A DNA stretch of 64,000 nucleotides from Haliotis rubra (GCF_003918875.1 NW_025764926.1:744001-808000); one strand, 5' to 3'. Counted from the first letter of the stretch, positions 2,443 to 62,787 are shown. Numbers and translations: made by a program. The notes: generated from the sequence alone by a model not told the origin.

Positions 2443-2960
2443 CTGAAGACAGACGAAATATTACCAAATCATGCTAGTTGAAATTATATAGAACAGCTGT
2501 TTTAACATACATAATATTTATTGAAATAGGACACCGAAACAACTTCACCCGTTTGCCTGACTTAACTTTTTAAGTGAGTGAGTTTAGTTTTACGCCGCAC
2601 TCAGCAATATTCCAGCTATATGGTGGCGGTCTGTAAATAATCGAGTCTGGAAGACAATCCAGTGATTAACAGCATGAGTATCGATCTACGCAATGGGGAT
2701 ACAATGACATGTGTCAACAAAGTCAGCGAGGCTGACCACCCGATCCCGTTAGTCGCCTCTTACGACAAGCATGAAGACCCATTCTAACCATTAACGACGT
2801 AGCAGTAACAACGCGTTAGTTCCAAGCAAGGTTCTAATAGCATAGATAGATAAACAGACAAACTGAAAGATAGATACTCTTCAGTATATTTTGGACGGTT
2901 ATTCGTTACTGGAATAATAATCAATTATGCCAATGCCTAAGGCCATACGGCTAGACTTAC

Positions 2961-10150: not shown

Positions 10151-13100
10151 GATTGATAGTCTGCTAAAATATTTCCCAGTCATACAATTTGAACATATTT
10201 TCGTGAATTCAAATTAAACGTGCTGAATTCATGTTACGTTAAACTCGCACCTGTTAAATCAAATAGTTTGGCCAATCACCCATGGAGGCATCAGTGCTAT
10301 TGAGAGTTGCGTCCCTTAGACCAAGGAGAATGGGTCGTAGGTTTGAATCCCAAATCCGCCCCGATTATGATCCTCGGATTTTCTGTGAAATGCGATTCAC
10401 TTTGATAGGCGTTGAGTATGCGCTAATTTCAAATACTTATAATGTTGTCAGGTGACATATCTTGTGACATGCAATTCACATCCACAGTGATAGATAGACA
10501 TCGCGATACGTCCGTTTAAATAAGACGCTACTACCTACTCCCCATCTCTATATACCATGCGTCTCTACCTACCAGTACACCCTATGACTCAGAGCTGCCT
10601 TTACCTGAACACGGGAGGTCACCGTGATGGCCCAGCCACCTATAACGCTGCTGTGCATGCAGAGTTATGTCCCCTAGACGTGCTCGAAACCTAGAACACT
10701 TCTTTCGAATCTCGTTCGGCCATGAAGTATATTTCTTGGTTTTATCAACACCACACCCATTGGTATCATTGAGTAAGTGGGTGAGTTTATTTTACGTCGC
10801 TTTTACCAGTATTCCATCAATATCACGGCGGGGGACACCAGGAATGGGCTTCACGTGGTTACATGGAAGTGGTAAACATTGAAGACCAACAGGTCTCCAA
10901 GCTTTCCGAAATTAATCTGGCACTATGTCATATAACTGAAGTGTTCAAAGCAATGTTACATAAATCTCATTCATTCACTCCAAGTCTCATGTCCAATATG
11001 GCTTTACTTCTGAATATCAGTATATTTAAGCCTGATAAATGTATACTGGTTAATATTGCGCCAACCTTTTTTCTATTTTTAACTGCGTGGGTGTCTCATG
11101 ACGAGAAAACCATATTTCTTAAGGGACCGGTGTTTCTATTCCTTCACGTTTTTACTTCTGGATACGAAGTTTCGTACCGTAGTATTACTTCCGTGAGTAT
11201 GATAGAAATGTCACAAAATATTTCTAATAACAGGTGAACAACAATATTGATCACAGATGACAATAAGTAATTTGTCCATATGTTTTAGAAGAAAAAATAT
11301 TCGAAGAGCATCATGGACATCCTAAGGACGTAAAAGGAAAACTGCTCATCATTTTCATTTTTTCTAAAGTTATGGTCTGTCAGTTTATAACACCCCCACC
11401 CCGAGCCCCCACCCAAAAAAAACAAAAAAACAACAACTTTTTTTCATTTAAACATGAAGACTCAATGATCTGTAATTCATTACTCAAGGGTTTGTCCCTT
11501 AGCCATGCAGGACCTGCTTGCCTTGGCTTTCATTCACATTTCTATTTGTAATATCTCTCACATACACGCACGCACGCACGCGCACGCACACACACGCATA
11601 CTGTAAACAAAATCTCAAAATTGTCTCACACGTATACATCAAACAAACTGCGAGCGAACATTGCCAGGGTGTATTTCGTAAAGCACAGCAGTCAACACAA
11701 TCACGTACAGCCTCATTGCAGCATATTAAACGCCAAGTGCATATTTAGCATAATGAAATTGTTACCGCCGATGTATCTAAATGCATAAATAATTGCAATT
11801 CATAATGTGTAAGCCTAGCATGCATCTACAAGCTTTCAAGGAACACTACGAGTAACCATATCTACGAGTTTCCAATGATGTATTTCGATTGCTATATAGT
11901 TAACATATAATCAGTAATTCCAGTGTGCACTTTGTTGTAAGTGATAAGAATCATTTGTATGTATATATAGTCTACTACTAAAGCGGATACAGTTAGCTCC
12001 CTTGCCCCATCTTTGCTATGGAGAACCTAGGCTGTATACTTACTGTGGAACCGGAGCAACGCTTAAAAAGAAATATATAATTAAAACATGAACGTAACAA
12101 TTCTATATTTATTCAAGATGTAAAATGTTCTTGAATAGAAACTCCCATCTAGGATGCACCTTGAAACAGAACACATGTCAACCATTCGGGCAGCCATTTC
12201 CGTCACCTACAAAATACTCGGCAAAGGAACGGAGTGTAGGGATATTGTATGAGCTCATACCTCATATCATCCGATCCCTCTGCGCAATGTTCTTACAATA
12301 TGACTTTATGAAGAGTCAATATTGTAATATGATTTGAGATCGATCAATATTAGTAAAAGGTTCACAACTGTCGTTCTGTTACGCAATATGCGAGTGACGT
12401 GAAATAGAGAAACTAGATAAAAAATGGCTTCCTCTAAATGCAATCCGAGATAAGGTCTATAATCGAGGTGAGCCGAGTGAAATATAACCATCGTTCAGCA
12501 GAGTACATCAACATGGACAATGTTTCTTACAGGGGGAAGGGGTATATGGTATCGTCCCCGGGAGAGTGAGTGAGTGGTTTTAGTTTTAGGCCGCACCCAT
12601 CAATATTACAGCTATATGGCGGCGGTCTGTAAATAATCGAGTCTGGACCAGACAAACCAGTGATCAACAGCATTAGCATCGATCTACGCAACTGGGATAC
12701 GATAACATGTGTCAACCAAATCTACAGGCCTGATCACCCGATCCCGTTAGTCGCCTCTTACGACAAGCATGGGTTACTGAAGATCAATTCTAACCATTAA
12801 CGACGTAGCAGTAACTATACTTCAATTCCAAGCAAGGTTCTATACTACGGCATAGATAGATAAACAGACAGACAGAAAGATAGATAATCTTCAGCATGAG
12901 TTTAATCCTAACCCAGATCTTCACGAGAGAGAGACAGAGGGCTTCGGCGTGACGGGCTAACGCTTTGACCACTAGGCTACCCCACCGCCCCCTTAATCAG
13001 AGACACGTTATTGTGATTTGAAAGCGTTGTTTAGCCATTCAGTTTGATAATCCGAATACCCTCCAAACCGTCCAATGTTATGCCAAGCGGGCTTGCTTTC

Positions 13101-14260: not shown

Positions 14261-14365
14261 TACTGACTTGGTTTAACCGTATATTTGCCTCATCCCACAT
14301 CAACACTGACAAGCAATCTAAAGTCGCATGCAGCAGGAAACGATCAAACGTTCTTCGAATATACA

Positions 14366-14619
14366 TAGTGAGTGAGTGAGTGAGTTTAGATTTACGCCGC
14401 AATCAGCAATATTACAGCTATATGGCGGCGGTATGTAAATAATCGGATTTGGACCAGACAGTCCAGTGATCAACAGCATGAGCATCGATCTGCACAAATG
14501 GGATACGATGACACGTGTCAACCATGTCAGCGAGCCTGACCACCCGATCCCGTTAGTCGCCTCTTACGACAAGCATGGGTTACTGAAGATCAATATTCTA
14601 ACCCGGACCTTCACGGGTA
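14366..14619 (-). mobile_element. SINE-B (~240 bp, non-tRNA pseudoknot head), full copy
   Basis: TSD cgaatataca (14356-65 / 14620-29); tail shared with SINE-A; about 14 copies (e.g. 2574, 12563, 15185, 23665, 25775, 28159, 43478, 58310, 61882). Confidence 0.9.
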
Positions 14620-15537
14620 CGAATATACAAAGACAACTTCAGATAGATATATTGATATATGCCAGGAAATCTCTTAGCATTTATTGGATCTTGTTTCAGC
14701 CTTTAATCTCAAGGAAACGTTGAACATCTGCGGCAGTAAAGGTCAGCCGGTCTTCTATGTATATATACAAAGAATGTCGCCACTGACTTCAAGCCCTAGA
14801 TCAAGTTTGGTTAGTTTGAATGACGTTTTTGTTCTGAAAAACGAGGTTCTTCATGGTAGCATAATCAGTTACACAGACATGTTAAATACAAAAATTGTTT
14901 GGTGTACTGTTTCCCCGGTATACCCGCGACTGTATCCCGAAATTCGTGGTAGTGCTGCCTAGCGCCGCGAAGATCTGCGGTTTTGTAAGCATTATCATCA
15001 GCACTAATACCGTTATTACGCTGCATCAGTACCGTTATAACGTCGCATATACATGTATATCACGATTGCGCCGCATTATTTTCTTATGGCGCTGTAATAG
15101 GGCACTGATGGTACATGACAGGGCGCAAAGGCGATATCAGTCTGTCAAATCAATATACCCAATGCAGCCCATGCAAGTCTAAAGCGAGTGGGTGAGTTTA
15201 GTTTTACGCCGCTCTCAGCAATATTCCAGCTATAAAGCGGCAGTCTGTAAATGTTCGAGTCTGAACCAGATGATCCAGTAATCAACAGCATGACCATCGA
15301 TCTACGCAACTGGGATACGATGACGTGTCGACCAAGTCAGCGAGCCTGACCACCCGATCCCGTTAGTGTGGCAAATCTAGATTATCACAGCATCTGAAAA
15401 TGAAGAAAGTCTCTGGCCTCCTATTTATTGTATTATATTAACATAGTTTTTAGTAAAATACGTTCATTTTGGAGACTGCATGTTAGTCTATGTTGATATT
15501 GTCCATCAATGACACAGTGAAAGCGCAGTAATTATGA

Positions 15538-21627: not shown

Positions 21628-22044
21628 AAATCCAGGATTCAACATCACATGAGCATCGATCTACACAGTTGGGATTCGATGACATGTGTCAACCAAATCA
21701 GTGAGCCTGACCACCTGATCCCGTTAGTCGCCTCTTACGACAAGCATGGGTTGCTGAAGACCAATTCTACCCCTGATCTTCACGGGTAGTTTAAGTATAA
21801 AGAAAATGCAATGTTTCGCAAGCCTCCACAGACTGGGAATATATTATAGACAAGACCACAAGCATCTGGTACCTGTGAAGTGAATATGCAGTAGAGGCAC
21901 ATAAACAAGAAAATATTTCCCCAATTAAACCTTGGCAAAAGTCTGGAAAATACTTTTCACGTAAGAAAAGTGATGTGCAGGTGTCTAGCTGTGTGTAAAC
22001 AACCAGATGTGTGGTGGTTCCCGAGAAACTGAAAACATTGGGTC

Positions 22045-23550: not shown

Positions 23551-23843
23551 TTATGCCTGATACCCAGCGTTCACACGCACTTGCACCTGAAACCAAGGTG
23601 CTCACTACCCTAATATTTTGCTCCAGCCTTTTCTCCACGTTTACACTTGGTTGGAAAAATACCAATGAAGGCCCGGGTTAGAATATTGAACTTCAGTAAC
23701 CCATGCTTGTCGTAAGAGGCCACTAACAGGATCGGGTGGTCAGGCTCGCTGACTTGGTTGACACATGTCATCGGTTCCCAACTGCGCAGATCGATGCTCA
23801 TGCTGTTGATCACTGGATTGTCTGGTCCAGACTCGATTATTTA

Positions 23844-23909
23844 TAGCTAAGATACATAGCGTTAACTAACATGAACTCTCATGTTAGTGAACGCTATGCA
23901 TCTTAGTTA
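23844..23909. mobile_element. 66-bp foldback mini-element with a 9-bp TSD, inside a SINE-B
   Basis: 31-bp arms (3 mismatches), 4-nt loop, TSD gattattta at 23835-43 and 23910-18. Confidence 0.8.
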
Positions 23910-25774
23910 GATTATTTACAGACCGCCGCCATATAGCTTGACTATTGCTGAGTGCGGCGTAAATCTAAACTCACTCACTCAGTTGGTTCGTAAACTACTT
24001 CCATCATTTGCTAGACTATGCAAAGGGAGATAACTCGTGCCTCGCATTCCTCTATCTCTCGCACGAAAGAGTTTCGATCTAAGCTTGGATCGGATCGTAA
24101 GATCGGGACCCGCTACAATCGGCCTAAAATCGGTTAGTGGAACGGGTGTAACTTTTAGCTAAGACCATTGTAAAATTGGCGTAACTTGCTAAGATTGATC
24201 TTAGATAAGATCGGTTAGTGGAACGGCACCCTGGAATGGTCTCGAAACGTTGTGAGAGAAGTTAAAAAAGAAGTTTAATCCATAAAAATATCTTGGACAA
24301 GTAATAACCTCTTAACACAGCACCAGGATATATAATATATATAGCAACAGGCTGTATGTAGCTGAATGGCCTGACTTACAACCTCGTCCCCTCTCTAACG
24401 CGCTGTATATTGAGAACCAGACGGAATGTGTTGTCATTAATCTTGCCGCCGTAAACACGTTTTCTTTGAAGACTCCTCTGAGAGATGGAATGTAAGTATC
24501 GTTGAAGTGCAAATGTGAAAACTTAAAATCTTCTGCTTAAGATTGCTAAACTTCTCCCGAATACCACTTGTCTGCCATGTTTGGAGGTTTTCTTACCACG
24601 CGATCAAAGCGGTGCTATCTATGCTTGGTAAAGTAGTCCTTCAAGCGCAGATACAGATTTCAAAACCCCTGCTAACACAAGTTGTTTGTTTTTTTTCGTT
24701 GTTGTTTTCTGACACAAACGGATATTTGGGTGCACACATTATAATTTATTGTTTCACAGTGTTAGTTAGCCTTGCGAACGGGATGAAAAAATACTTTAGC
24801 TCTTAAGTTTCAAAATATGGATGTTGCTTCGTTTCAATATTCACGTATATCTAACTCATACTACCAACAAATAAGTTCGATGTTAATGACGTGGCATGAA
24901 GCAGATTTATCTCCTAAACGTAAGATTGCCCATCTGTTACCCACAAACAGACGCACTGAGTTGGGTAGTGGCATAACGATGAGGCACAACTTAAAATCTC
25001 ATTAATGTTCTAGAACATTACATAATGGCTTCTTTCTGTGCTTGATGACGCTACCGACATTCACACGGATTACATATACACTGTACACGGAATAATATAA
25101 TTTTGCCCATGCTCCGCTCCCAGATGCCAAAAGATGCCATTAGATCATATGATGTATGTTATTTGCCTGCAACAGTTTGTTTATCGAATTTCCTTGGCAA
25201 ATTATTTCAAAATGAATTGCAATAAAATACATATTACTTCCTTTAGCATGATGAAAGTAGTGTTGTGTGATTACATAAAAGTGTCTGCAAGCATTTTTAT
25301 ATCTTACGCTTAAACGTTATAGGTTTTACCAGCCGGCTAAAAGACGTTCTGATATTACGCATGTGCGGCATTTGGTAGCGGTGTAAGTGCTCATTACGAT
25401 GGAAGTGCTCTGGAAGTAGGTAGCCTCTGTGAGCAGTTAGACCCCATCTGCCACGGATCGCTTGTGTTAGATTCGATCTCGATGCCTCTTCCCATGCCGT
25501 GAGGGATGTCCCAGTCTGGTTACTGTTGAAACTATATATCGCAGCGGGGGACGCCAAGATTGTATCGGGCTTCACAGCTGTGATAGAGTCGAACTGGGCA
25601 ACGTGCCTGAGGAGAGACTGTTCTTACCACATGGCTACGGCACCGCCCTCAATTAGTGAAGAATGATACCAGATGTACTGCGTACTAGCGTTTTAAGGAT
25701 AGGACTTCTTATCTGGAGTTCGAATCTCGAGCATCCTGGCTTCGGTCATCATCTCACGAAATCTGAACATAGGA

Positions 25775-25990
25775 ACCCGTGAAGATCCGGGTTAGAATTG
25801 GTCTCCAGTAACCCATGCTTGTCGTAAGAGGCGACTAACGGGATCAGGTGATCGCTGACTTGGTTGATACATGTCATCGTATCCCAGCTGCGTAGATCGA
25901 TGCTCATGCTGTTAGTCAGTCTTCCCATACTCAACAAACCGAGCGCCATATAGCTGGACTATTCTGAGTGCGGCGTTAAACATCAAACAA
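25775..25990 (+). mobile_element. SINE-B copy
   Basis: Begins acccgtgaagatccgggttag; ends gcggcgttaaac. Confidence 0.85.
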
Positions 25991-27625: not shown

Positions 27626-28666
27626 GGTCCGATTAAAATAAACATATCACAATTATTTCCCCGAGTCCTTAAAACGGCAGAGGGGGAAGGGTCCTTCTGA
27701 AATATATAGTTATATTACAACTATTTGAAAAAAATGTTTTTATAGAACAAGTGTTAGACAAACATACTACATAATCTTACTCACTTTTCAACTCTCACTG
27801 CTGATGAAAATTACCGCCAATGCGTGATAGTATACGGTTTAACTAAGTTGTCAGTGTATGTATGCTATCATGTATGTTTGAGACAACATTGTATTCCCAT
27901 GCAGCTTATACTATATTATTAAAACTGACCATATTTTTTAATATTTAGTGTTGTCTTATTTAACATGATGACTCATGCTGAATGCGGCCACCGGTATTTC
28001 CAAGCGGTATTTTGTGCAATGGTCTGTTTAGCATCCTGTATTCGGAAAAGGAGATGGCTGAGGTGGTCATTTTGGAGTGAGTGTGAGAGTGAGTGTGTTG
28101 GGTTTAACGCCTCCCTGAACAGATATTTAAGAGATACAAGTACAAACAGTTCCATCCCACCCGTGAAGGTCCGGGTTAGAATGTACCTTCAGCAACCCTT
28201 ACTAACGGGATCGGGTGGTCAGGCTCGCTGGCTTGGTTGACACATGCCATCGGTTCCCAATTGCGCAGATCGATGCTCATGCTGTTGATCACTGGATTGT
28301 CTGGTCCAGAATCGACTATTTACAGACCGCCGCCATATAGCTGGAATATTGCTGAGTGCGGCGTAAAACTAACTGACTGACTGAGTTTGGTTTTACGCCG
28401 CTTTTAGCAATATTCCAGCAACATCACGGCGGGGGACACCAGAAATGGGCTTCACACATTGTACCCATGTGGGGATTCGAACCCGGGTCTTTGGCGTGAC
28501 GAGCCAACGTTTTAACCACTAGGCTACCCCACCGCCCCGGCGTAAAACTAAACTCACTCACTCACAATCAGTTCAGTATGTGAGTAGCGCATGTCTTAAA
28601 AGGCTATCACTACGTTAAACGGGTATGCGTTTGGTGCTGGCATACCATTGCTCCAAATCGGGAGTC

Positions 28667-42906: not shown

Positions 42907-43477
42907 CAATATAGTTAATATACACAACAAATAGGCTTATCAGCTTAAGTAGACTACGGGGTGAACATTCCGGGGTTACATAGTGAACTACAGCATAGAT
43001 AATATATGAGGCGTTATAGACGTCGTCGTGACAGCTCGATAACCGAGATAAAAACAACCCTCCTGAGCTAAGTTCAACTTTCAGTTGTAAACAATATGGT
43101 TTTGCAATCTGAGAGCAGAATCGTGTTTGATTATGTCAAAACATTTCATTTTTCAACCGTTATACACTTCCATCCCATACGACAGATTTTTGGGGACACT
43201 TCCGAACATATACTTTTATTGTTTTATAAATTGTCCTGATAGAGACTGGTCTGGTATTCATGCACGCTTAGGACTATGTAATGGAGTCTTGTTGATAAAG
43301 CGTTGAATGGTCACGCCGAAGACCTGGTTCGATTCCAAAAAGGCGTGCAAAGTTTGAAGTACATTGTTTCTGTACTTTGCCGTGACTTATTGCTAAAGGT
43401 GGCATAAAACCATACTCCCTCACTCACTCACGAGTAATAAATGCCAATGGTATCGTCTGACGTCCAAACGAAAAAAG

Positions 43478-43715
43478 ACTCGTGAAGATCCGGATTAGAA
43501 TTGGTCTTCATTAACCCATGCTTGTCGTAATATATAAGAAGCGACTAACGGGATCGAGTGGTCAGGCTCGCTGACTCGGTACACACATGTCATCGTAATT
43601 TCGTAGATTGAATTGATCACTGGATTGTCTGGTCCAGACTCGATTATTTACAGACCGCCGCTATGTAGCTGGAATATTTCCGGGTGCGGCGTTAAACAAC
43701 GACCAACCAACCAAA
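43478..43715 (+). mobile_element. SINE-B copy
   Basis: Consensus match; ccaaacg-type flanking direct repeat. Confidence 0.85.
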
Positions 43716-57900: not shown

Positions 57901-58309
57901 GTGTCAGATGAAGATGGTAATTTCAACTTTAATCGACTACTACGTATCTAAGGGAACTAACTCATCTGATGCTAACGTGACTATCAAAGTCGAATTATCA
58001 TTTGAATCGGACATAAAATAATTCATGATTGGCCGCATGGGTTGCCTACAGCCGTTTGGACGAAGCAAGAATGTTTAACACGGCGGGGAATATAATGATA
58101 GGCACGTTGTTTCTGTTTTTCTAAATGAACCCATGTTACACACGCGACGAACACTCATTTGTAACCATTACGCTGTCTCACATCCTCGATAATCTCCAGG
58201 GTATACGTTACGATCAATCTCCACTATTGGCTTTCTCAAAGCCAAAGAACAAGTATATGCATGTTGAAAATACACAGTAATCATCATCAACTACTTCACA
58301 GCCGTCACG

Positions 58310-58524
58310 ACCCCTGAAGATCCGGTTTAGAATTGATCTTCATTAAGACATGCTTGTCGTAAGAAGCGACTAACGGGATCGAGTGGTCAGGCTCGCTGAC
58401 TTCGTTGATCGATGCTCATGCTGTTGATCACTGGATTGTCAGGTCCAGACTCGATTATTTACAGACCGCAACCATATAGGTGGAATATTGCTGAGTGCGA
58501 CGTTAAACTCAACTCACTCACTCA
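58310..58524 (+). mobile_element. SINE-B copy
   Basis: Consensus match; imperfect TSD tcacag(c/t)cg(t/c)cacg. Confidence 0.85.
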
Positions 58525-59446
58525 CAGTCGCCACGTGAAAAAATATAATTAAAAATTGTTTTCACAAAATTGAAATATAAGAATATTTCACACAACACTA
58601 GTTTCACTCTTGGATAAATGGACCAGTGAATCTTTGGGTGATTAATCTGTGTTTAATGAGATTAATGTGAACACCCGTGAGTCGTGTCTAACCTAGTCTG
58701 TCTCACAGTCCCTGAACCAGATTAATTTCCCTACTGCCAAGCCCTCTCCGCAGTGCTAAAGCCCTAAATAAAGCAAGTCTAGATTTCCTCAGGTTCTCTG
58801 GTCTCCCTGGGGCTCCTTTTCAATATAAATGGGCTTGTTTGTTACTATCAAAATTATATATATTCAGAGACTAAGCCTTAGTCTATGTCTAACCGTGCAC
58901 TTTTACACTCCAACACCACATTTCTATCGACGGGTCTGCTTTGGGATACAGTCGGACACGAGAGACGTCCTGTGACGTCATCTACTGTTTAACGGGATAT
59001 CATATAACGATACAAATGATCATTATTGTCAAGATCAACTATTCTCGATGACAGTTATTTTTTCTTTTCATAGCTTTTGAAACCTGGATACTAACATATT
59101 ACACTGTTTGCCGATACTGGTATTTGCTTCCTTACATCCGCAGCATTTTGTCATAAATGCTTGGCTCTGTTGGGACATGAGTGCACAACAAAGTCAGTAA
59201 TCTTTACTAACCATTTTCCATTTTCTACATTTTGCTACATTTGTTTATGTCGGTTTCTAATTCAGGAGATGCATAAGAGACCGATTGGGCGTTGTTTACG
59301 CCGCTTTTGAAAATATGTAGGGAATATCACTGGGTGAGATGCCAGCAATGGGCTTCACAATCCCTGTCGAAATCAACCAAGGCCATCAGTATGGCTGTAT
59401 CAGTACTCTTTATGGTACTTAACTGAGAATAGCATCTTGAGCAAGG

Positions 59447-61447: not shown

Positions 61448-61881
61448 GATATTGTGAGATCAATTTGCACAGCGCCAATTCAAAACGAGTTATTTCTTCA
61501 ATCTAAAGGGGTGAATGGGGGACACACACTGTCCTTGTTCCTGACTCAAGTGTTTGTCATACAGTTACTGCATTAGTGCGCTGTCAGTCTGGAATTATCT
61601 GCAGTAAAATATGCATATTTATTGCCGCGTGTCACGAGGGACGGAAACATCTCACTAAGCACTTATGAAATAAAATGTTCGACTATTTTAGGAAATGCGG
61701 ACTATGTAACAACCCGTAATGTCAAACAAACGTAAGATACAAGTCAAGTTTGATCCTTTAAGGAACATATGAGACTTAGGTCACAACAAATCGATATTTG
61801 AGGTGGGGTTACCACGTTGTTTCCCTCACCTCTTGGGCGGAGGGGTAGCCTAGTGGTTAAAGCGTTCGCTCGTCACACTGA

Positions 61882-62114
61882 GTGAGTGAGTGAATGAGTT
61901 TATGTTAAGCCGCACTATATGGCGGCGGTCTGTAAATAATCGAGTCTGGACCAGACAACCCAGTGATCAACCGCATGAGCATCGATCGGCGCAAGTGGAA
62001 ACCGATGACACGTGTCAACCAAGCCAGCGAGTCTGACCACCCGATCCCGTTAGTCGCCTCTTACGACAAGCATGGGTTACTGAAGGTTCATTCTAACCCG
62101 GACCTTCACGGGTG
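61882..62114 (-). mobile_element. SINE-B copy inserted into a SINE-A (61836-62230, +)
   Basis: 12-bp TSD tcgtcacactga at 61870-81 and 62115-26 inside the SINE-A tRNA head. Confidence 0.92.
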
Positions 62115-62787
62115 TCGTCACACTGAAGACCCGAGTTCGATTCCCCACATGGGTACAATGTGTGATGCCCATTTCTGGTGTTTCCCGCTCTCTTATTGCA
62201 GGAATATTGCTAAAAGCTGCATAAAACCATATTATTTTACTCTTCACCTCTTACTCTCCCTCGGACTTACTTTTGTTCTAGTCTACTCCACTCATTCAGT
62301 CAGTAGTAGGCTGGGTGACTTGGTGACTTGCCGTACATGGTACTCCGACTGTGCCCATGATAACAGTCACTGGTTTCTCCGACGTATTTGCAGGCCGCAC
62401 TTATACAGTTAGACAATGCTAGGGGCGACGTAAACCAACAAAGACGCCTATATGTGTATAATAAGGGATAATAATGGCCAAACGCCCTCTGAAAGTAGAG
62501 AAGTCGCGATATTTGACGGCGTAAAATCTTATTCACTCACTCGATATTTGACGGCGTAAAATCTTATTCACTCACTCACTAAAATAATGTACGCTATCAT
62601 GATGTATTTGCCCATCCGCCCTCTCAATGAAGCAAGTCTAGGTTTGAGGTGTAACGGCTATCTCCCTTGGGCCTTTTTTCAGTTTAAATGCCGCTGTTTG
62701 GTTCTATCAAAATGATACATGGGCCGCCATTTTTTAAATGATACATGATGATTTTCAGAATAAAGCGCCATGCTACTGCACACCCCC

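What the first reader, a model, noticed from the sequence alone, without database searches (positions are those of the whole stretch)
14549..14619. SINE-like retroposon with a covarying pseudoknot at its 5' end instead of a Pol III promoter: candidate self-cleaving ribozyme head
Seen: SINE-B (about 14 copies) has TSDs and the same 3' tail as the tRNA SINE, but no recognisable A/B boxes. Its consensus head reads CCCGU GAAGRUC C GGGUUA GAAU(n) GRUCUUC AG UAACCC AUGCUU GUCG UAAGAGG CGAC UA ACGGG. This pairs as A-B-C-B'-C'-D-D'-A': CCCGU/ACGGG closes everything, GAAGRUC/GRUCUUC forms a stem, loop GGGUUA pairs with UAACCC (the pseudoknot), and GUCG/CGAC forms a hairpin followed by UA. Copies covary in stem B: GAAGAUC/GAUCUUC (58316), GAAGGUC/GAUCUUC with a G-U pair (this copy), and GAAGGU/ACCUUC (28165 and about 62083-62107). 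Full-length copies start within 1-3 nt of CCCGU (14619, 25775, 28159, 43478, 58310, 62114). Established: several non-LTR elements define their 5' ends with HDV-like ribozymes. Inference: the topology resembles HDV P2/P3/P1.1/P4 without P1 and matches no ribozyme class I can fit exactly. It may be an undescribed self-processing or structured RNA that lets a promoter-less retroposon cut itself out of host transcripts.
Basis: partly seen in the sequence, partly recalled or inferred. Interest (0 to 1): 0.85.

Follow-up and report, generated by a model that had tools for sequence, protein, structure and literature searches.

The report
LINE-derived head of abalone SINE
This is the head of a very abundant, already described abalone "LP-SINE": a stretch copied from the start of its partner LINE that keeps one helix of that LINE's HDV-like ribozyme but has lost the catalytic core, so it is probably a structured mimic of the LINE's 5' end and not a new ribozyme.

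Summary
The repeat family is real. It has target-site duplications, an (ACTC)n tail and no tRNA, 5S or Rfam match. Its 5' end is sharp, at (N)ACCCGTGAAG. The genome holds 16,611 exact copies of a 23-nt head pattern.

The pseudoknot claim is weak. In 44 distinct heads, covariation is no higher than in shuffled controls. Only stem B shows compensatory change. Helix C and closing helix A show none. A 2-nt linker could not let a 7-bp stem B and a 6-bp helix C form together, and the two score as near-equal alternative helices.

The family fits the published Haliotis "LP-SINE" (Matetovici 2016, PMC4758252), whose roughly 70-bp head comes from a LINE 5' UTR. I found an abundant I/Nimb-like LINE in this genome with these features:
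- It starts with a minimal HDV-like ribozyme that lacks P4.
- A module homologous to the SINE head follows the ribozyme; its stem B differs at three pairs, all still complementary.
- It ends in the same tail as the SINE.

SINE nt 1-35 equal the ribozyme minus P3, L3, the P1 3' strand and the catalytic C. No known ribozyme fold fits the SINE head.

Self-cleavage is unsupported but not excluded. At least seven first-reader notes on other DNA of this genome describe the same head.

The parts
14368..14620 (-). Full-length SINE-B (LP-SINE) copy of the young subfamily. G1 is at 14620 and the (ACTC)n tail ends at 14368.
   Evidence: Target-site duplication TGTATATTCG at 14620/14621-14630 and at 14356-14365.
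14549..14619 (-). LINE-derived head, nt 2-72 of the element.
   Evidence: Aligns to nt 59-140 of the LINE 5' UTR in L044. For older subfamilies the score is 34-38 against a shuffle mean of 15-16, reached by 0 of 500 shuffles.
14613..14617 (-). Helix A 5' strand, CCCGT. It corresponds to part of the P1 5' strand of the LINE ribozyme.
   Evidence: Pairs with ACGGG at 14549-14553. 87% of cells are paired and there is no compensatory change. The aligned partner is absent in LINE module 2.
14549..14553 (-). Helix A 3' strand, ACGGG.
14606..14612 (-). Stem B 5' strand, GAAGGTC. It corresponds to the P2 5' strand of the LINE ribozyme.
   Evidence: The same helix is seen in three versions: SINE GAAGATC/GATCTTC, LINE module 1 GAAGAGC/GCTCTTC and LINE module 2 GTGGACC/GGTCCAC. 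Four of the 7 pairs show compensatory change across these versions.
14585..14591 (-). Stem B 3' strand, GATCTTC.
14599..14604 (-). Helix C 5' strand, GGGTTA, in the loop of stem B. It is a relic of the GGGTAA joining strand (J1/4) of the LINE ribozyme.
   Evidence: alignment to the ribozyme with nt 18-37 removed. No compensatory change.
14577..14582 (-). Helix C 3' strand, TAACCC. A common variant, CAACCC, breaks the end pair.
14556..14570 (-). Hairpin D, GTCG-TAAGAGG-CGAC.
   Evidence: Found in every single-sequence fold. 91% of cells are paired, with only one-sided changes. LINE module 2 has a C.C mismatch in this stem.
14368..14425 (-). 3' tail: stem-loop plus ACTAAA hexamer plus (ACTC)n. 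It is shared with the tRNA-derived SINE and with the 3' end of the LINE.
   Evidence: Tail-only matches at about 20 further window loci. 80% identity over 56 nt to L044:1907-1961(-), which is the true LINE 3' end: 40 copies end there.
61881..62115 (-). Full-length copy of the ACCTTC subfamily (G-C at stem B pair 5), inserted into a tRNA-derived SINE.
   Evidence: Target-site duplication TCAGTGTGACGA.
58308..58525 (+). Full-length older copy, with an internal deletion in the body.
43476..43695 (+). Full-length older copy, with a 7-nt insertion in hairpin D.
28157..28382 (+). Full-length copy with hairpin D deleted.
25773..25979 (+). Full-length older copy of the GGTCTTC subfamily (U.G wobble in stem B).
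23659..23981 (+). Full-length copy with an insertion in the body.
21631..21789 (-). Copy with an intact 5' end, GGGGTA/CAACCC subfamily. This is the subfamily closest to the LINE module.

Best explanation
The finding is the head of an LP-SINE, a non-autonomous retroposon that imitates both ends of its partner LINE RNA.

The partner is an abundant I/Nimb-like LINE (endonuclease, reverse transcriptase, RNase H) in the same genome. Its anatomy is:
- Nt 1-58 form a minimal HDV-like ribozyme without P4, which cuts exactly at the element's first base.
- From about nt 62 comes a second, ribozyme-less module.
- Its 3' end is a stem-loop followed by (ACTC)n.

The SINE tail is that LINE tail. The SINE head is a mosaic of the two LINE 5' modules:
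- Nt 1-35 are the ribozyme with P3, L3, the P1 3' strand and the catalytic C removed. The ribozyme's P2 helix survives as hairpin B, with the former joining strands as its loop.
- Nt 37-72 match the LINE's second module.

Shown here: the homology, the loss of the catalytic core, and compensatory maintenance of hairpin B. G.U wobbles occur on this strand only, which points to selection at the RNA level.

Inferred: the head does not cleave itself. It more likely serves as a LINE-like structured 5' end. That end would keep the RNA stable and help the LINE machinery make full-length copies. The fixed 5' end would then come from transcription starting at the first base. The start could be driven by the LINE-derived head itself, as proposed for LP-SINEs, or by a few master loci.

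Helices B and C are alternatives or at most partly coexist. The full pseudoknot is unlikely.
For: Family and 5' end:
- Target-site duplications, tail and uniform start.
- 16,611 exact copies of a 23-nt head pattern in the genome.

Published LP-SINEs in Haliotis:
- They have a roughly 70-bp head from the 5' end of Nimb/RTE LINE 5' UTRs, are flanked by target-site duplications, carry an ACTAAA hexamer before the terminal repeats, and share tails with tRNA SINEs.

The LINE in L044:
- Pfam finds endonuclease, RT and RNase H.
- Its 5' end at L044:7979(-) is fixed by 40 copies of 96-99% identity.
- Three HDV-type Rfam models align with their first position on LINE nt 1. The best has E = 6.4e-4 and is below the gathering score.

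SINE head against the LINE:
- Against LINE nt 59-140 the alignment scores 34-38, with a shuffle mean of 15-16; 0 of 500 shuffles reach it.
- SINE nt 1-35 against the ribozyme without nt 18-37: 26 of 34-35 identical and collinear.
- The SINE and LINE start with the same ACCCGTGAAGA.

Stem B:
- It is kept through both-sided changes at four of its seven pairs across the SINE, LINE module 1 and LINE module 2.

Tail:
- It is homologous to the true LINE 3' end.

Against catalysis:
- No HDV or other ribozyme model matches the SINE head at E up to 10.
- No SINE copy carries the LINE-type core, by exact pattern.
- At least 1,694 of about 2,581 LINE module-2 copies still have the ribozyme upstream.

On the role of a 5' structure:
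- A stable structured 5' module raises insertion efficiency for R2 templates (PMC11331408).
Against: - The mechanism that regenerates the exact 5' end was not tested. I found no recognisable promoter motif in the head.
- According to the 2016 paper, the same module sits at the very 5' end of LINEs from locust, zebrafish and turtle. That fits an autonomous 5'-end-defining activity, which could be a promoter or an unknown ribozyme.
- I could not compare directly with the published Hdi_LP or Repbase sequences.
- The LINE evidence rests on one full copy (L044) plus genome-wide counts.
- The LINE ribozyme call is below Rfam's gathering scores and was not tested at the bench.
- The runs laid are contigs of uncertain RNA status and cannot show RNA ends.
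Confidence: 0.6

Rival explanations
1. The head is an undescribed self-cleaving ribozyme that cuts at its own 5' end and frees the SINE RNA from host transcripts.
For: - The 5' ends are uniform without any recognisable promoter.
- The head descends from a ribozyme region.
- By the 2016 paper, the same module is the 5' terminus of LINEs in three phyla.
- Ribozyme-headed non-autonomous elements are known: R2 SIDEs, NARTc. The autonomous Perere-3 LINE carries a twister-variant ribozyme at its 5' end.
Against: - No ribozyme model matches the head.
- The catalytic C, P3/L3 and P1.1 of the parent ribozyme are gone.
- The helix order is nested, not the HDV double pseudoknot.
- Only hairpin B has compensatory support.
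- In the LINE, the module is internal and at least two thirds of copies keep the 60 nt upstream.
- Contigs from RNA-like runs cross the SINE 5' boundary about as often as the 3' boundary: 27 against 23 in X1, and 38 against 42 in X2. This is weak evidence, because the runs may be DNA and are unstranded.
Confidence: 0.08
2. The head has no function of its own. A few master loci with external promoters produce the RNA. The 5' end and hairpins are inherited baggage from the founding LINE-derived RNA.
For: - There is a subfamily structure, with a very young burst at 98-99% identity.
- The one or two bases before ACCC differ between subfamilies (GT, G, T, C, A), as expected if each master has its own start site.
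- Covariation within the family is not above shuffles.
Against: - Stem B is kept through G.U intermediates and both-sided changes in independent lineages.
- The head is conserved across molluscs and in LINEs of other phyla, according to the paper.
- 62% of head-bearing copies are full length.
Confidence: 0.15
3. It is a Pol III SINE with a cryptic internal promoter. GGGTTAGAAT would act as a degenerate B box derived from a tRNA T arm.
For: - SINE nt 8-26 match the T-arm region of the co-resident tRNA SINE at 15 of 19 positions. I saw this by eye; the post hoc chance is about 0.01.
- This copy has no TTTT run in the sense strand.
Against: - ARAGORN and the Rfam tRNA model find nothing.
- The B-box-like motif lies at +17, with no room for an A box upstream. 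It also lacks the conserved C of GGTTCGA.
- The same bases are explained by the GGGTAA joining strand of the LINE ribozyme.
- An ACTAAA poly(A)-signal-like hexamer precedes the tail.
Confidence: 0.07
4. The 5' end is made by processing in trans. A host nuclease would recognise the three-helix fold, or the retained P1 5' strand would be cut by a ribozyme core supplied by LINE RNA.
For: - The SINE keeps the LINE's P1 5' strand. GUACCC can pair with the LINE's GGGUGC.
- Helices A and D form in every single-sequence fold.
Against: - After self-cleavage the LINE core stays paired to its own P1 strand, so no free core is expected.
- No evidence of any kind was obtained here.
Confidence: 0.05

Closest known systems
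LP-SINEs (Hdi_LP/Hmi_LP of Haliotis, Lsa_2, Sgl_LP, Oco/Oed_LP; Matetovici et al. 2016, PMC4758252)
   Same: - Abalone host.
- No small-RNA head.
- A roughly 70-bp head taken from the 5' end of a LINE 5' UTR.
- Target-site duplications.
- Terminal tandem repeats preceded by ACTAAA.
- Tail shared with tRNA-derived SINEs.
   Different: I could not compare sequences directly, because neither the figures nor Repbase are on hand.

The paper treats the head as a possible promoter and mentions no structure. Three points are added here: the head is related to an HDV-like ribozyme region of a resident LINE; that LINE also supplies the tail; hairpin B is kept by compensatory change.
Pr77/L1TcRz of trypanosomatid L1Tc, NARTc, ingi/RIME, SIDER (PMC3383444, PMC4035085)
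   Same: - The first roughly 77 nt are shared by an autonomous LINE and its non-autonomous relatives.
- The region is linked to an HDV-like ribozyme and to an internal promoter.
- Some descendants have lost catalysis.
   Different: There, the non-autonomous elements keep the whole ribozyme fold. Here, the SINE lacks P3, L3, the P1 3' strand and the catalytic C. Promoter activity is untested here.
HDV-like ribozymes at LINE 5' ends (R2, L1Tc and others)
   Same: The partner LINE here starts with one. Its elements are P1 (nt 1-7 with 31-37, including a G1.U37 pair), L3 (UCCUCGU), P1.1, J4/2 (GCUAA) and P2 (nt 10-16 with 52-58). SINE hairpin B is that P2 helix.
   Different: The SINE head itself fails every defining feature of the fold. 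The LINE ribozyme has no P4.
R2 SIDEs (short internally deleted elements, PMC3414825)
   Same: Non-autonomous elements made of the 5' and 3' ends of their LINE.
   Different: SIDEs keep an active 5' ribozyme and are plain deletion derivatives. SINE-B has an unrelated body and a ribozyme-less head.

Membership tests
LP-SINE (LINE-5'-UTR-headed SINE) | Head of about 70 bp homologous to the 5' end of a LINE 5' UTR | tested here: met
   Head against LINE nt 59-140 in L044 scores 34-38, reached by 0 of 500 shuffles. Nt 1-35 match LINE nt 1-58 without nt 18-37 at 26 of 34-35 positions.
LP-SINE (LINE-5'-UTR-headed SINE) | No tRNA, 5S or 7SL-derived head | tested here: met
   ARAGORN finds no gene. 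Rfam gives no hit at gathering scores and only a chance snoRNA hit at E = 2.7.
LP-SINE (LINE-5'-UTR-headed SINE) | Variable target-site duplications and a terminal tandem repeat preceded by a poly(A)-signal-like hexamer | tested here: met
   Duplications of 8-17 nt in 26 copies. ACTAAA followed by (ACTC)n.
LP-SINE (LINE-5'-UTR-headed SINE) | Tail or body shared with tRNA-derived SINEs | tested here: met
   About 20 tail-only matches in the window that belong to the tRNA SINE.
LP-SINE (LINE-5'-UTR-headed SINE) | Sequence identity to the published Hdi_LP/Hmi_LP consensus and to Nimb-17_LMi nt 1-68 | not testable with these tools
   Neither the figures nor the supplements of PMC4758252 are held. 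Repbase is not available.
HDV-like self-cleaving ribozyme | Nested double pseudoknot with strand order P1-P2-P3-P3'-P1'-(P4)-P2' | tested here: not met
   The SINE order is A5'-B5'-B3'-D5'-D3'-A3', with everything nested inside A. The LINE has the canonical order.
HDV-like self-cleaving ribozyme | P1.1 (two L3 bases paired to the two bases after P1) and a catalytic C in J4/2 | tested here: not met
   The loop of D is TAAGAGG and the bases after ACGGG are AT, so no pairing is possible. The LINE's CGC, which holds the candidate catalytic C, is absent from the SINE loop GGGTTAGAAT.
HDV-like self-cleaving ribozyme | Match to HDV-type covariance models | tested here: not met
   No HDV family matches the SINE head at E up to 10. 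The LINE 5' end matches three.
H-type RNA pseudoknot (helices B and C) | Both helices supported by compensatory change | tested here: inconclusive
   B is supported. C has no compensated change and carries a common pair-breaking variant.
H-type RNA pseudoknot (helices B and C) | Loop lengths that allow both helices to form at once | not testable with these tools
   The linker from B3' to C3' is 2 nt (AG) and would have to cross a 7-bp stem. By the usual loop-length rules (my knowledge, not computed here) this is too short. In nested folds B and C give similar energies as alternatives.
tRNA-derived SINE (Pol III A and B boxes) | A box near +10 to +20 and B box 30-60 nt downstream | tested here: not met
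   The only B-box-like string, GGGTTAGAAT, lies at +17 and lacks the conserved C. There is no tRNA model hit.
Hammerhead, twister, twister-sister, pistol, hatchet, hairpin, VS | Match to the family covariance model | tested here: not met
   No hit at E up to 10 on 311 bases, both strands.

The most novel reading that the evidence does not exclude
The LP-type head could be a new kind of 5'-end-defining RNA module. It would be a rearranged descendant of an HDV-like ribozyme that still directs precise 5' processing, either by cutting itself or by recruiting a host nuclease. This would explain why the same roughly 70-nt module sits at the very 5' end of SINEs and of LINEs from several phyla without any promoter motif.
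Probability: 0.08. Interest if true: 0.85.

Novelty: already known. Interest (0 to 1): 0.35.

Why it matters
SINEs are normally defined by Pol III heads taken from small RNAs. LP-SINEs are the published exception, and the origin and role of their head were left open in 2016.

This analysis suggests the abalone head is a catalytically gutted copy of the partner LINE's HDV-like ribozyme region joined to the module that follows it. If that holds, it gives a concrete origin for LP heads. It also shows that a SINE can copy both ends of its LINE. And it predicts that some LP heads in other animals, and the 5' ends of Nimb and RTE LINEs, are or were ribozymes.

For the scan, it settles a motif that first readers flagged many times in this genome. 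It is an ordinary, very abundant repeat, not a supported new ribozyme class.

Tried and rejected
- Rfam on the whole window at gathering scores found nothing. On the element at E up to 10 it gave only a chance snoRNA hit.
- ARAGORN found no tRNA.
- RNAalifold on 44 heads gave a different, weak consensus of -6 kcal/mol.
- A covariance model built from the heads (R1) was meant to find divergent relatives. The genome search returned only SINE-B copies: 150 were scored out of about 696,000 rough candidates. In the held loci it did not detect the LINE module. Its lower-scoring hits were decayed copies, chimeras or a 50-bp satellite.
- An apparent 'longer' head at window 2737 and 12735 is a duplicated block that holds a 5'-truncated copy, not a longer SINE.
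- A pattern scan of viral contigs gave one chance match. Two pattern scans of metagenome contigs gave nothing. A malformed pattern was corrected in between.
- Public runs were all Logan contigs of uncertain RNA status. SINE-B is embedded in thousands of contigs of three organisms, and no information on RNA starts is available.
- I tried to fit the SINE head to an HDV-like fold in several ways: helix A as P1 with hairpin D as P3; ACCC/GGGU or AACC/GGUU as P2; GUCAG/CUGAC as P4. Each fails on P1.1 and on the catalytic C.
- I looked for SINE copies that retain the LINE-type ribozyme core and found none by exact pattern.
LINE evidence therefore rests on locus L044 plus counts. I did not use padded patterns to read further flanks.
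- MAFFT misaligned LINE module 2 by one base, so helix tables were made by script.

Full report
**1. What is at the site**

On the minus strand, window 14368-14620 holds a 253-nt retroposon.
- It starts G-TACCCGTGAAGG and ends in a stem-loop, the hexamer ACTAAA and (ACTC)n.
- It is flanked by the duplication TGTATATTCG.
- About 16 loci in the window hold its body. Eight are full length. About 20 further loci hold only the tail, which belongs to a tRNA-derived SINE.

In the whole 1.38-Gb genome:
- A 103-nt head query finds 40 scored copies at 97-100% identity.
- All 30 copies fetched begin G-TACCCGTG, and their upstream flanks are unrelated.
- A 23-nt head pattern has 16,611 exact matches.

In a 264-kb sample (the window plus twenty 10-kb pieces), 45 hits carry head sequence and 28 start at head positions 1-5.

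Older subfamilies start G, T, C or A followed by ACCCGTG. Target-site duplications were found for 26 copies. Ten of these have 2-3 extra, non-uniform bases between the duplication and G1.

The family, its sharp 5' end and the lack of a longer upstream head are therefore confirmed. The one apparent longer form, at window 2737 and 12735, is a duplicated genomic block.

**2. The proposed fold**

All four complementarities exist in the sequence.
- 90.3% of cells are paired, against 90.0% in shuffles.
- The covariation score is 0.085 against 0.081, and 87 of 500 shuffles reach it.
- Two pairs change on both sides, against 2.9 expected.

The only notable pair is stem B pair 5: A-U in 22 copies, G.U in 16, G-C in 4. 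The G-C copies share the ACCTTC variant, so I read them as one subfamily and one event.

Helix C has a common variant, T39 to C, in 12 of 44 copies. It breaks the end pair and is never compensated. Helix A and hairpin D change on one side only, mostly by CpG decay.

RNAalifold does not recover the fold. Single-sequence folds have z-scores near -1, except for one subfamily at -3.1. Helix A and hairpin D recur in these folds, while B and C compete.

Scored as nested alternatives on the young copy, A+B+D gives -15.7 kcal/mol and A+C+D gives -16.2 kcal/mol.

The connector from the 3' strand of B to the 3' strand of C is 2 nt. By the usual loop-length rules for H-type pseudoknots, that cannot cross a 7-bp stem. 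This rests on my own knowledge and was not computed. The full pseudoknot is therefore doubtful.

**3. Known families**

Rfam finds nothing at gathering scores in the window. It finds no ribozyme or tRNA model at E up to 10 on the element. ARAGORN finds no tRNA.

**4. Literature**

Matetovici et al. 2016 (PMC4758252) describe 'LP-SINEs' in Littorina, Haliotis diversicolor and H. midae (Hdi_LP, Hmi_LP), Ostrea, Saccostrea and scallops. Their features are:
- They are flanked by target-site duplications.
- They end in tandem repeats preceded by AATATA or ACTAAA.
- In Saccostrea the LP-SINE shares its body and tail with tRNA SINEs.
- Their first roughly 70 bp is homologous to the first 68 bp of the LINEs Nimb-17_LMi, I-3_DR and RTE-9_CPB.

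The authors proposed a promoter role and left it untested. Earlier notes of this scan call the genome an abalone. Every feature I could test fits. Sequence identity could not be checked, because the figures and supplements are not held.

**5. The LINE in this genome**

Locus L044 holds a full LINE on its minus strand.
- Its ORF2 has endonuclease, RT and RNase H domains.
- Its ORF1 carries a CCHC-type motif (CFKCQKFGHG), seen in the translation.
- Forty genomic copies of 96-99% identity begin at L044:7979-7980. This fixes the 5' end at GGCACCCGTGAAGAGCC.
- Rfam aligns three HDV-type models with their first position on that first base: RF02682 (E = 6.4e-4), RF00094 and RF01787. All are below gathering scores.

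Read by eye, the fold is:
- P1: nt 1-7 with 31-37, including a G1.U37 pair.
- P3: ACC/GGT.
- L3: UCCUCGU.
- P1.1: C22 C23 with G38 G39.
- J1/4: GGGUAAC.
- No P4.
- J4/2: GCUAA.
- P2: nt 10-16 with 52-58.

This is a minimal HDV-like ribozyme placed to cut exactly at the element's 5' end, as known for other LINEs.

The LINE's 3' end, L044:1907-1961(-), carries the same stem-loop and (ACTC)n as the SINE tail: 80% identity over 56 nt. Forty LINE copies end there. This LINE, or a close relative, is therefore the likely partner.

**6. How the SINE head relates to the LINE**

The SINE head aligns to LINE nt 59-140, which I call module 2. Scores are 34-38 for the older subfamilies. The shuffle mean is 15-16, and 0 of 500 shuffles reach the observed score.

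In module 2, stem B reads GTGGACC/GGTCCAC, against GAAGATC/GATCTTC in the SINE. Three pairs differ and all remain complementary: two are changed on both sides against every SINE variant, and the third (U-A to C-G) is both-sided against the commonest SINE form. In the ribozyme, P2 reads GAAGAGC/GCTCTTC, a further both-sided change at that third pair. SINE subfamilies add a G.U, a U.G and a G-C state.

Hairpin B is thus a maintained helix. The wobble pairs show that the constraint acts on RNA of this strand.

The other helices fare worse in module 2:
- Helix A has no aligned partner.
- Hairpin D has a C.C mismatch.
- Helix C shrinks to 4 bp without compensation.

SINE nt 1-35 align collinearly with the ribozyme once its nt 18-37 (P3, L3, P1 3' strand) are removed. 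Identity is 26 of 34-35, and the first 14 nt match at 13 positions. The CGC that holds the candidate catalytic C is also missing.

The head is therefore a mosaic. Its first part is the ribozyme minus its core. The ribozyme's P2 has become hairpin B, and the GGGUAA...UAAGA joining strands have become its loop. The 3' part of module 2 follows.

**7. Does it cleave?**

- The SINE helix order is A5'-B5'-B3'-D5'-D3'-A3', which is nested. The HDV order is P1-P2-P3-P3'-P1'-P2'.
- P1.1 cannot form.
- No C occupies the catalytic position.
- Alternative assignments that I tried by eye fail on the same points.
- No SINE copy keeps the LINE-type core, by exact pattern.
- In the LINE, module 2 is internal. 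There are 1,694 ribozyme-module 2 junctions against 2,581 module-2 matches, both counted at up to 3 mismatches. All 40 best 5' UTR copies include the ribozyme. Module 2 therefore does not efficiently cut off what lies upstream of it.
- Contigs from four small, possibly RNA runs of two organisms hold thousands of SINE-B pieces. They cross the 5' boundary about as often as the 3' boundary. This is weak evidence, because the contigs are unstranded and may be DNA.

None of this excludes a new catalytic fold, but nothing supports one.

**8. Most likely mechanism**

Shown here:
- The SINE copies both ends of its LINE.
- It keeps the LINE's first bases and the P2 hairpin under RNA-level constraint.
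- It lacks the catalytic core.

Inferred:
- The head works as a LINE-like structured 5' end. For R2 templates, a stable HDV-like 5' fold raises insertion efficiency, probably by protecting the 5' end (PMC11331408).
- In trypanosomatids, the first 77 nt shared by L1Tc and NARTc act both as promoter and as ribozyme.
- The exact 5' end is most simply regenerated by transcription starting at nt 1. The start could be driven by the head itself, which is the LP-SINE proposal, or by a few master loci. The variable one or two bases before ACCC in different subfamilies fit the master-locus version.

I give about 0.6 to this non-catalytic reading as a whole, 0.08 to a new ribozyme, and the rest to the other rivals.

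**9. Novelty and score**

The family and its LINE-derived head are published, so the finding is already known as a kind.

Three points appear to be new, as far as the held literature shows:
- The head is linked to an HDV-like ribozyme region.
- The same LINE supplies both the head and the tail.
- Hairpin B is kept by compensatory change.

These points are modest but testable.

At least seven first-reader notes on other DNA of this genome describe the same head. One followed-up note reports the LINE 5' UTR module with three compensatory changes. I reproduced that result independently.

Noticed in passing
L044:7922-7979 (-): The 5' terminus of an abundant I/Nimb-like LINE is a minimal HDV-like ribozyme without P4. 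Three Rfam HDV-type models align with their first position on the element's first base, all below gathering scores. About 3,300 candidate 5' UTR copies exist in the genome.
   Followed up: partly
L044:1907-1961 (-): The LINE 3' end has the same loop and (ACTC)n as the SINE tail, but its stem reads CGTCAC/GTGACG where the SINE has CGCCGC/GCGGCG. These are apparent compensatory changes in the element recognised at the 3' end.
   Followed up: partly
L040:8857-9572: A 50-bp satellite of about 14 copies. Its unit resembles SINE-B head nt 4-52 (CCTGGTTAGAA...AGCATCCCAGGCTTGTC) but has lost the stem B complementarity.
   Followed up: partly
window 2700-2960 and 12700-12960 (-): Two copies of one block, about 10 kb apart, each holding a 5'-truncated SINE-B with about 100 nt of shared upstream sequence. 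This is a local duplication, not a longer SINE form.
   Followed up: partly
window 61881-62130 (-): A SINE-B copy is inserted inside a tRNA-derived SINE, with the duplication TCAGTGTGACGA. This shows the order of the two insertions.
   Followed up: no
loci L010, L011, L013, L016, L018, L019, L027, L029 (5' junctions near 1500-1600): Among 26 copies with a clear target-site duplication, ten (eight of them young copies, listed here) have 2-3 extra, non-uniform bases between the duplication and the first base of the SINE. This looks like untemplated addition at the 5' junction.
   Followed up: no
window 14595-14613 (-) compared with the tRNA SINE at window 62116-62155: SINE-B nt 8-26 match the anticodon-stem and T-arm region of the co-resident tRNA SINE at 15 of 19 positions (TGAAGAYCCGRGTTMGAWT). 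The post hoc chance is about 0.01. The same bases are also explained by the LINE ribozyme, so the meaning is unclear.
   Followed up: no
window 23843-23910 (+): The SINE-B copy at 23659-23981 carries an insertion of about 66 bp with an internal inverted repeat. It lies inside the stretch that another first-reader note calls a palindromic retro-element.
   Followed up: no
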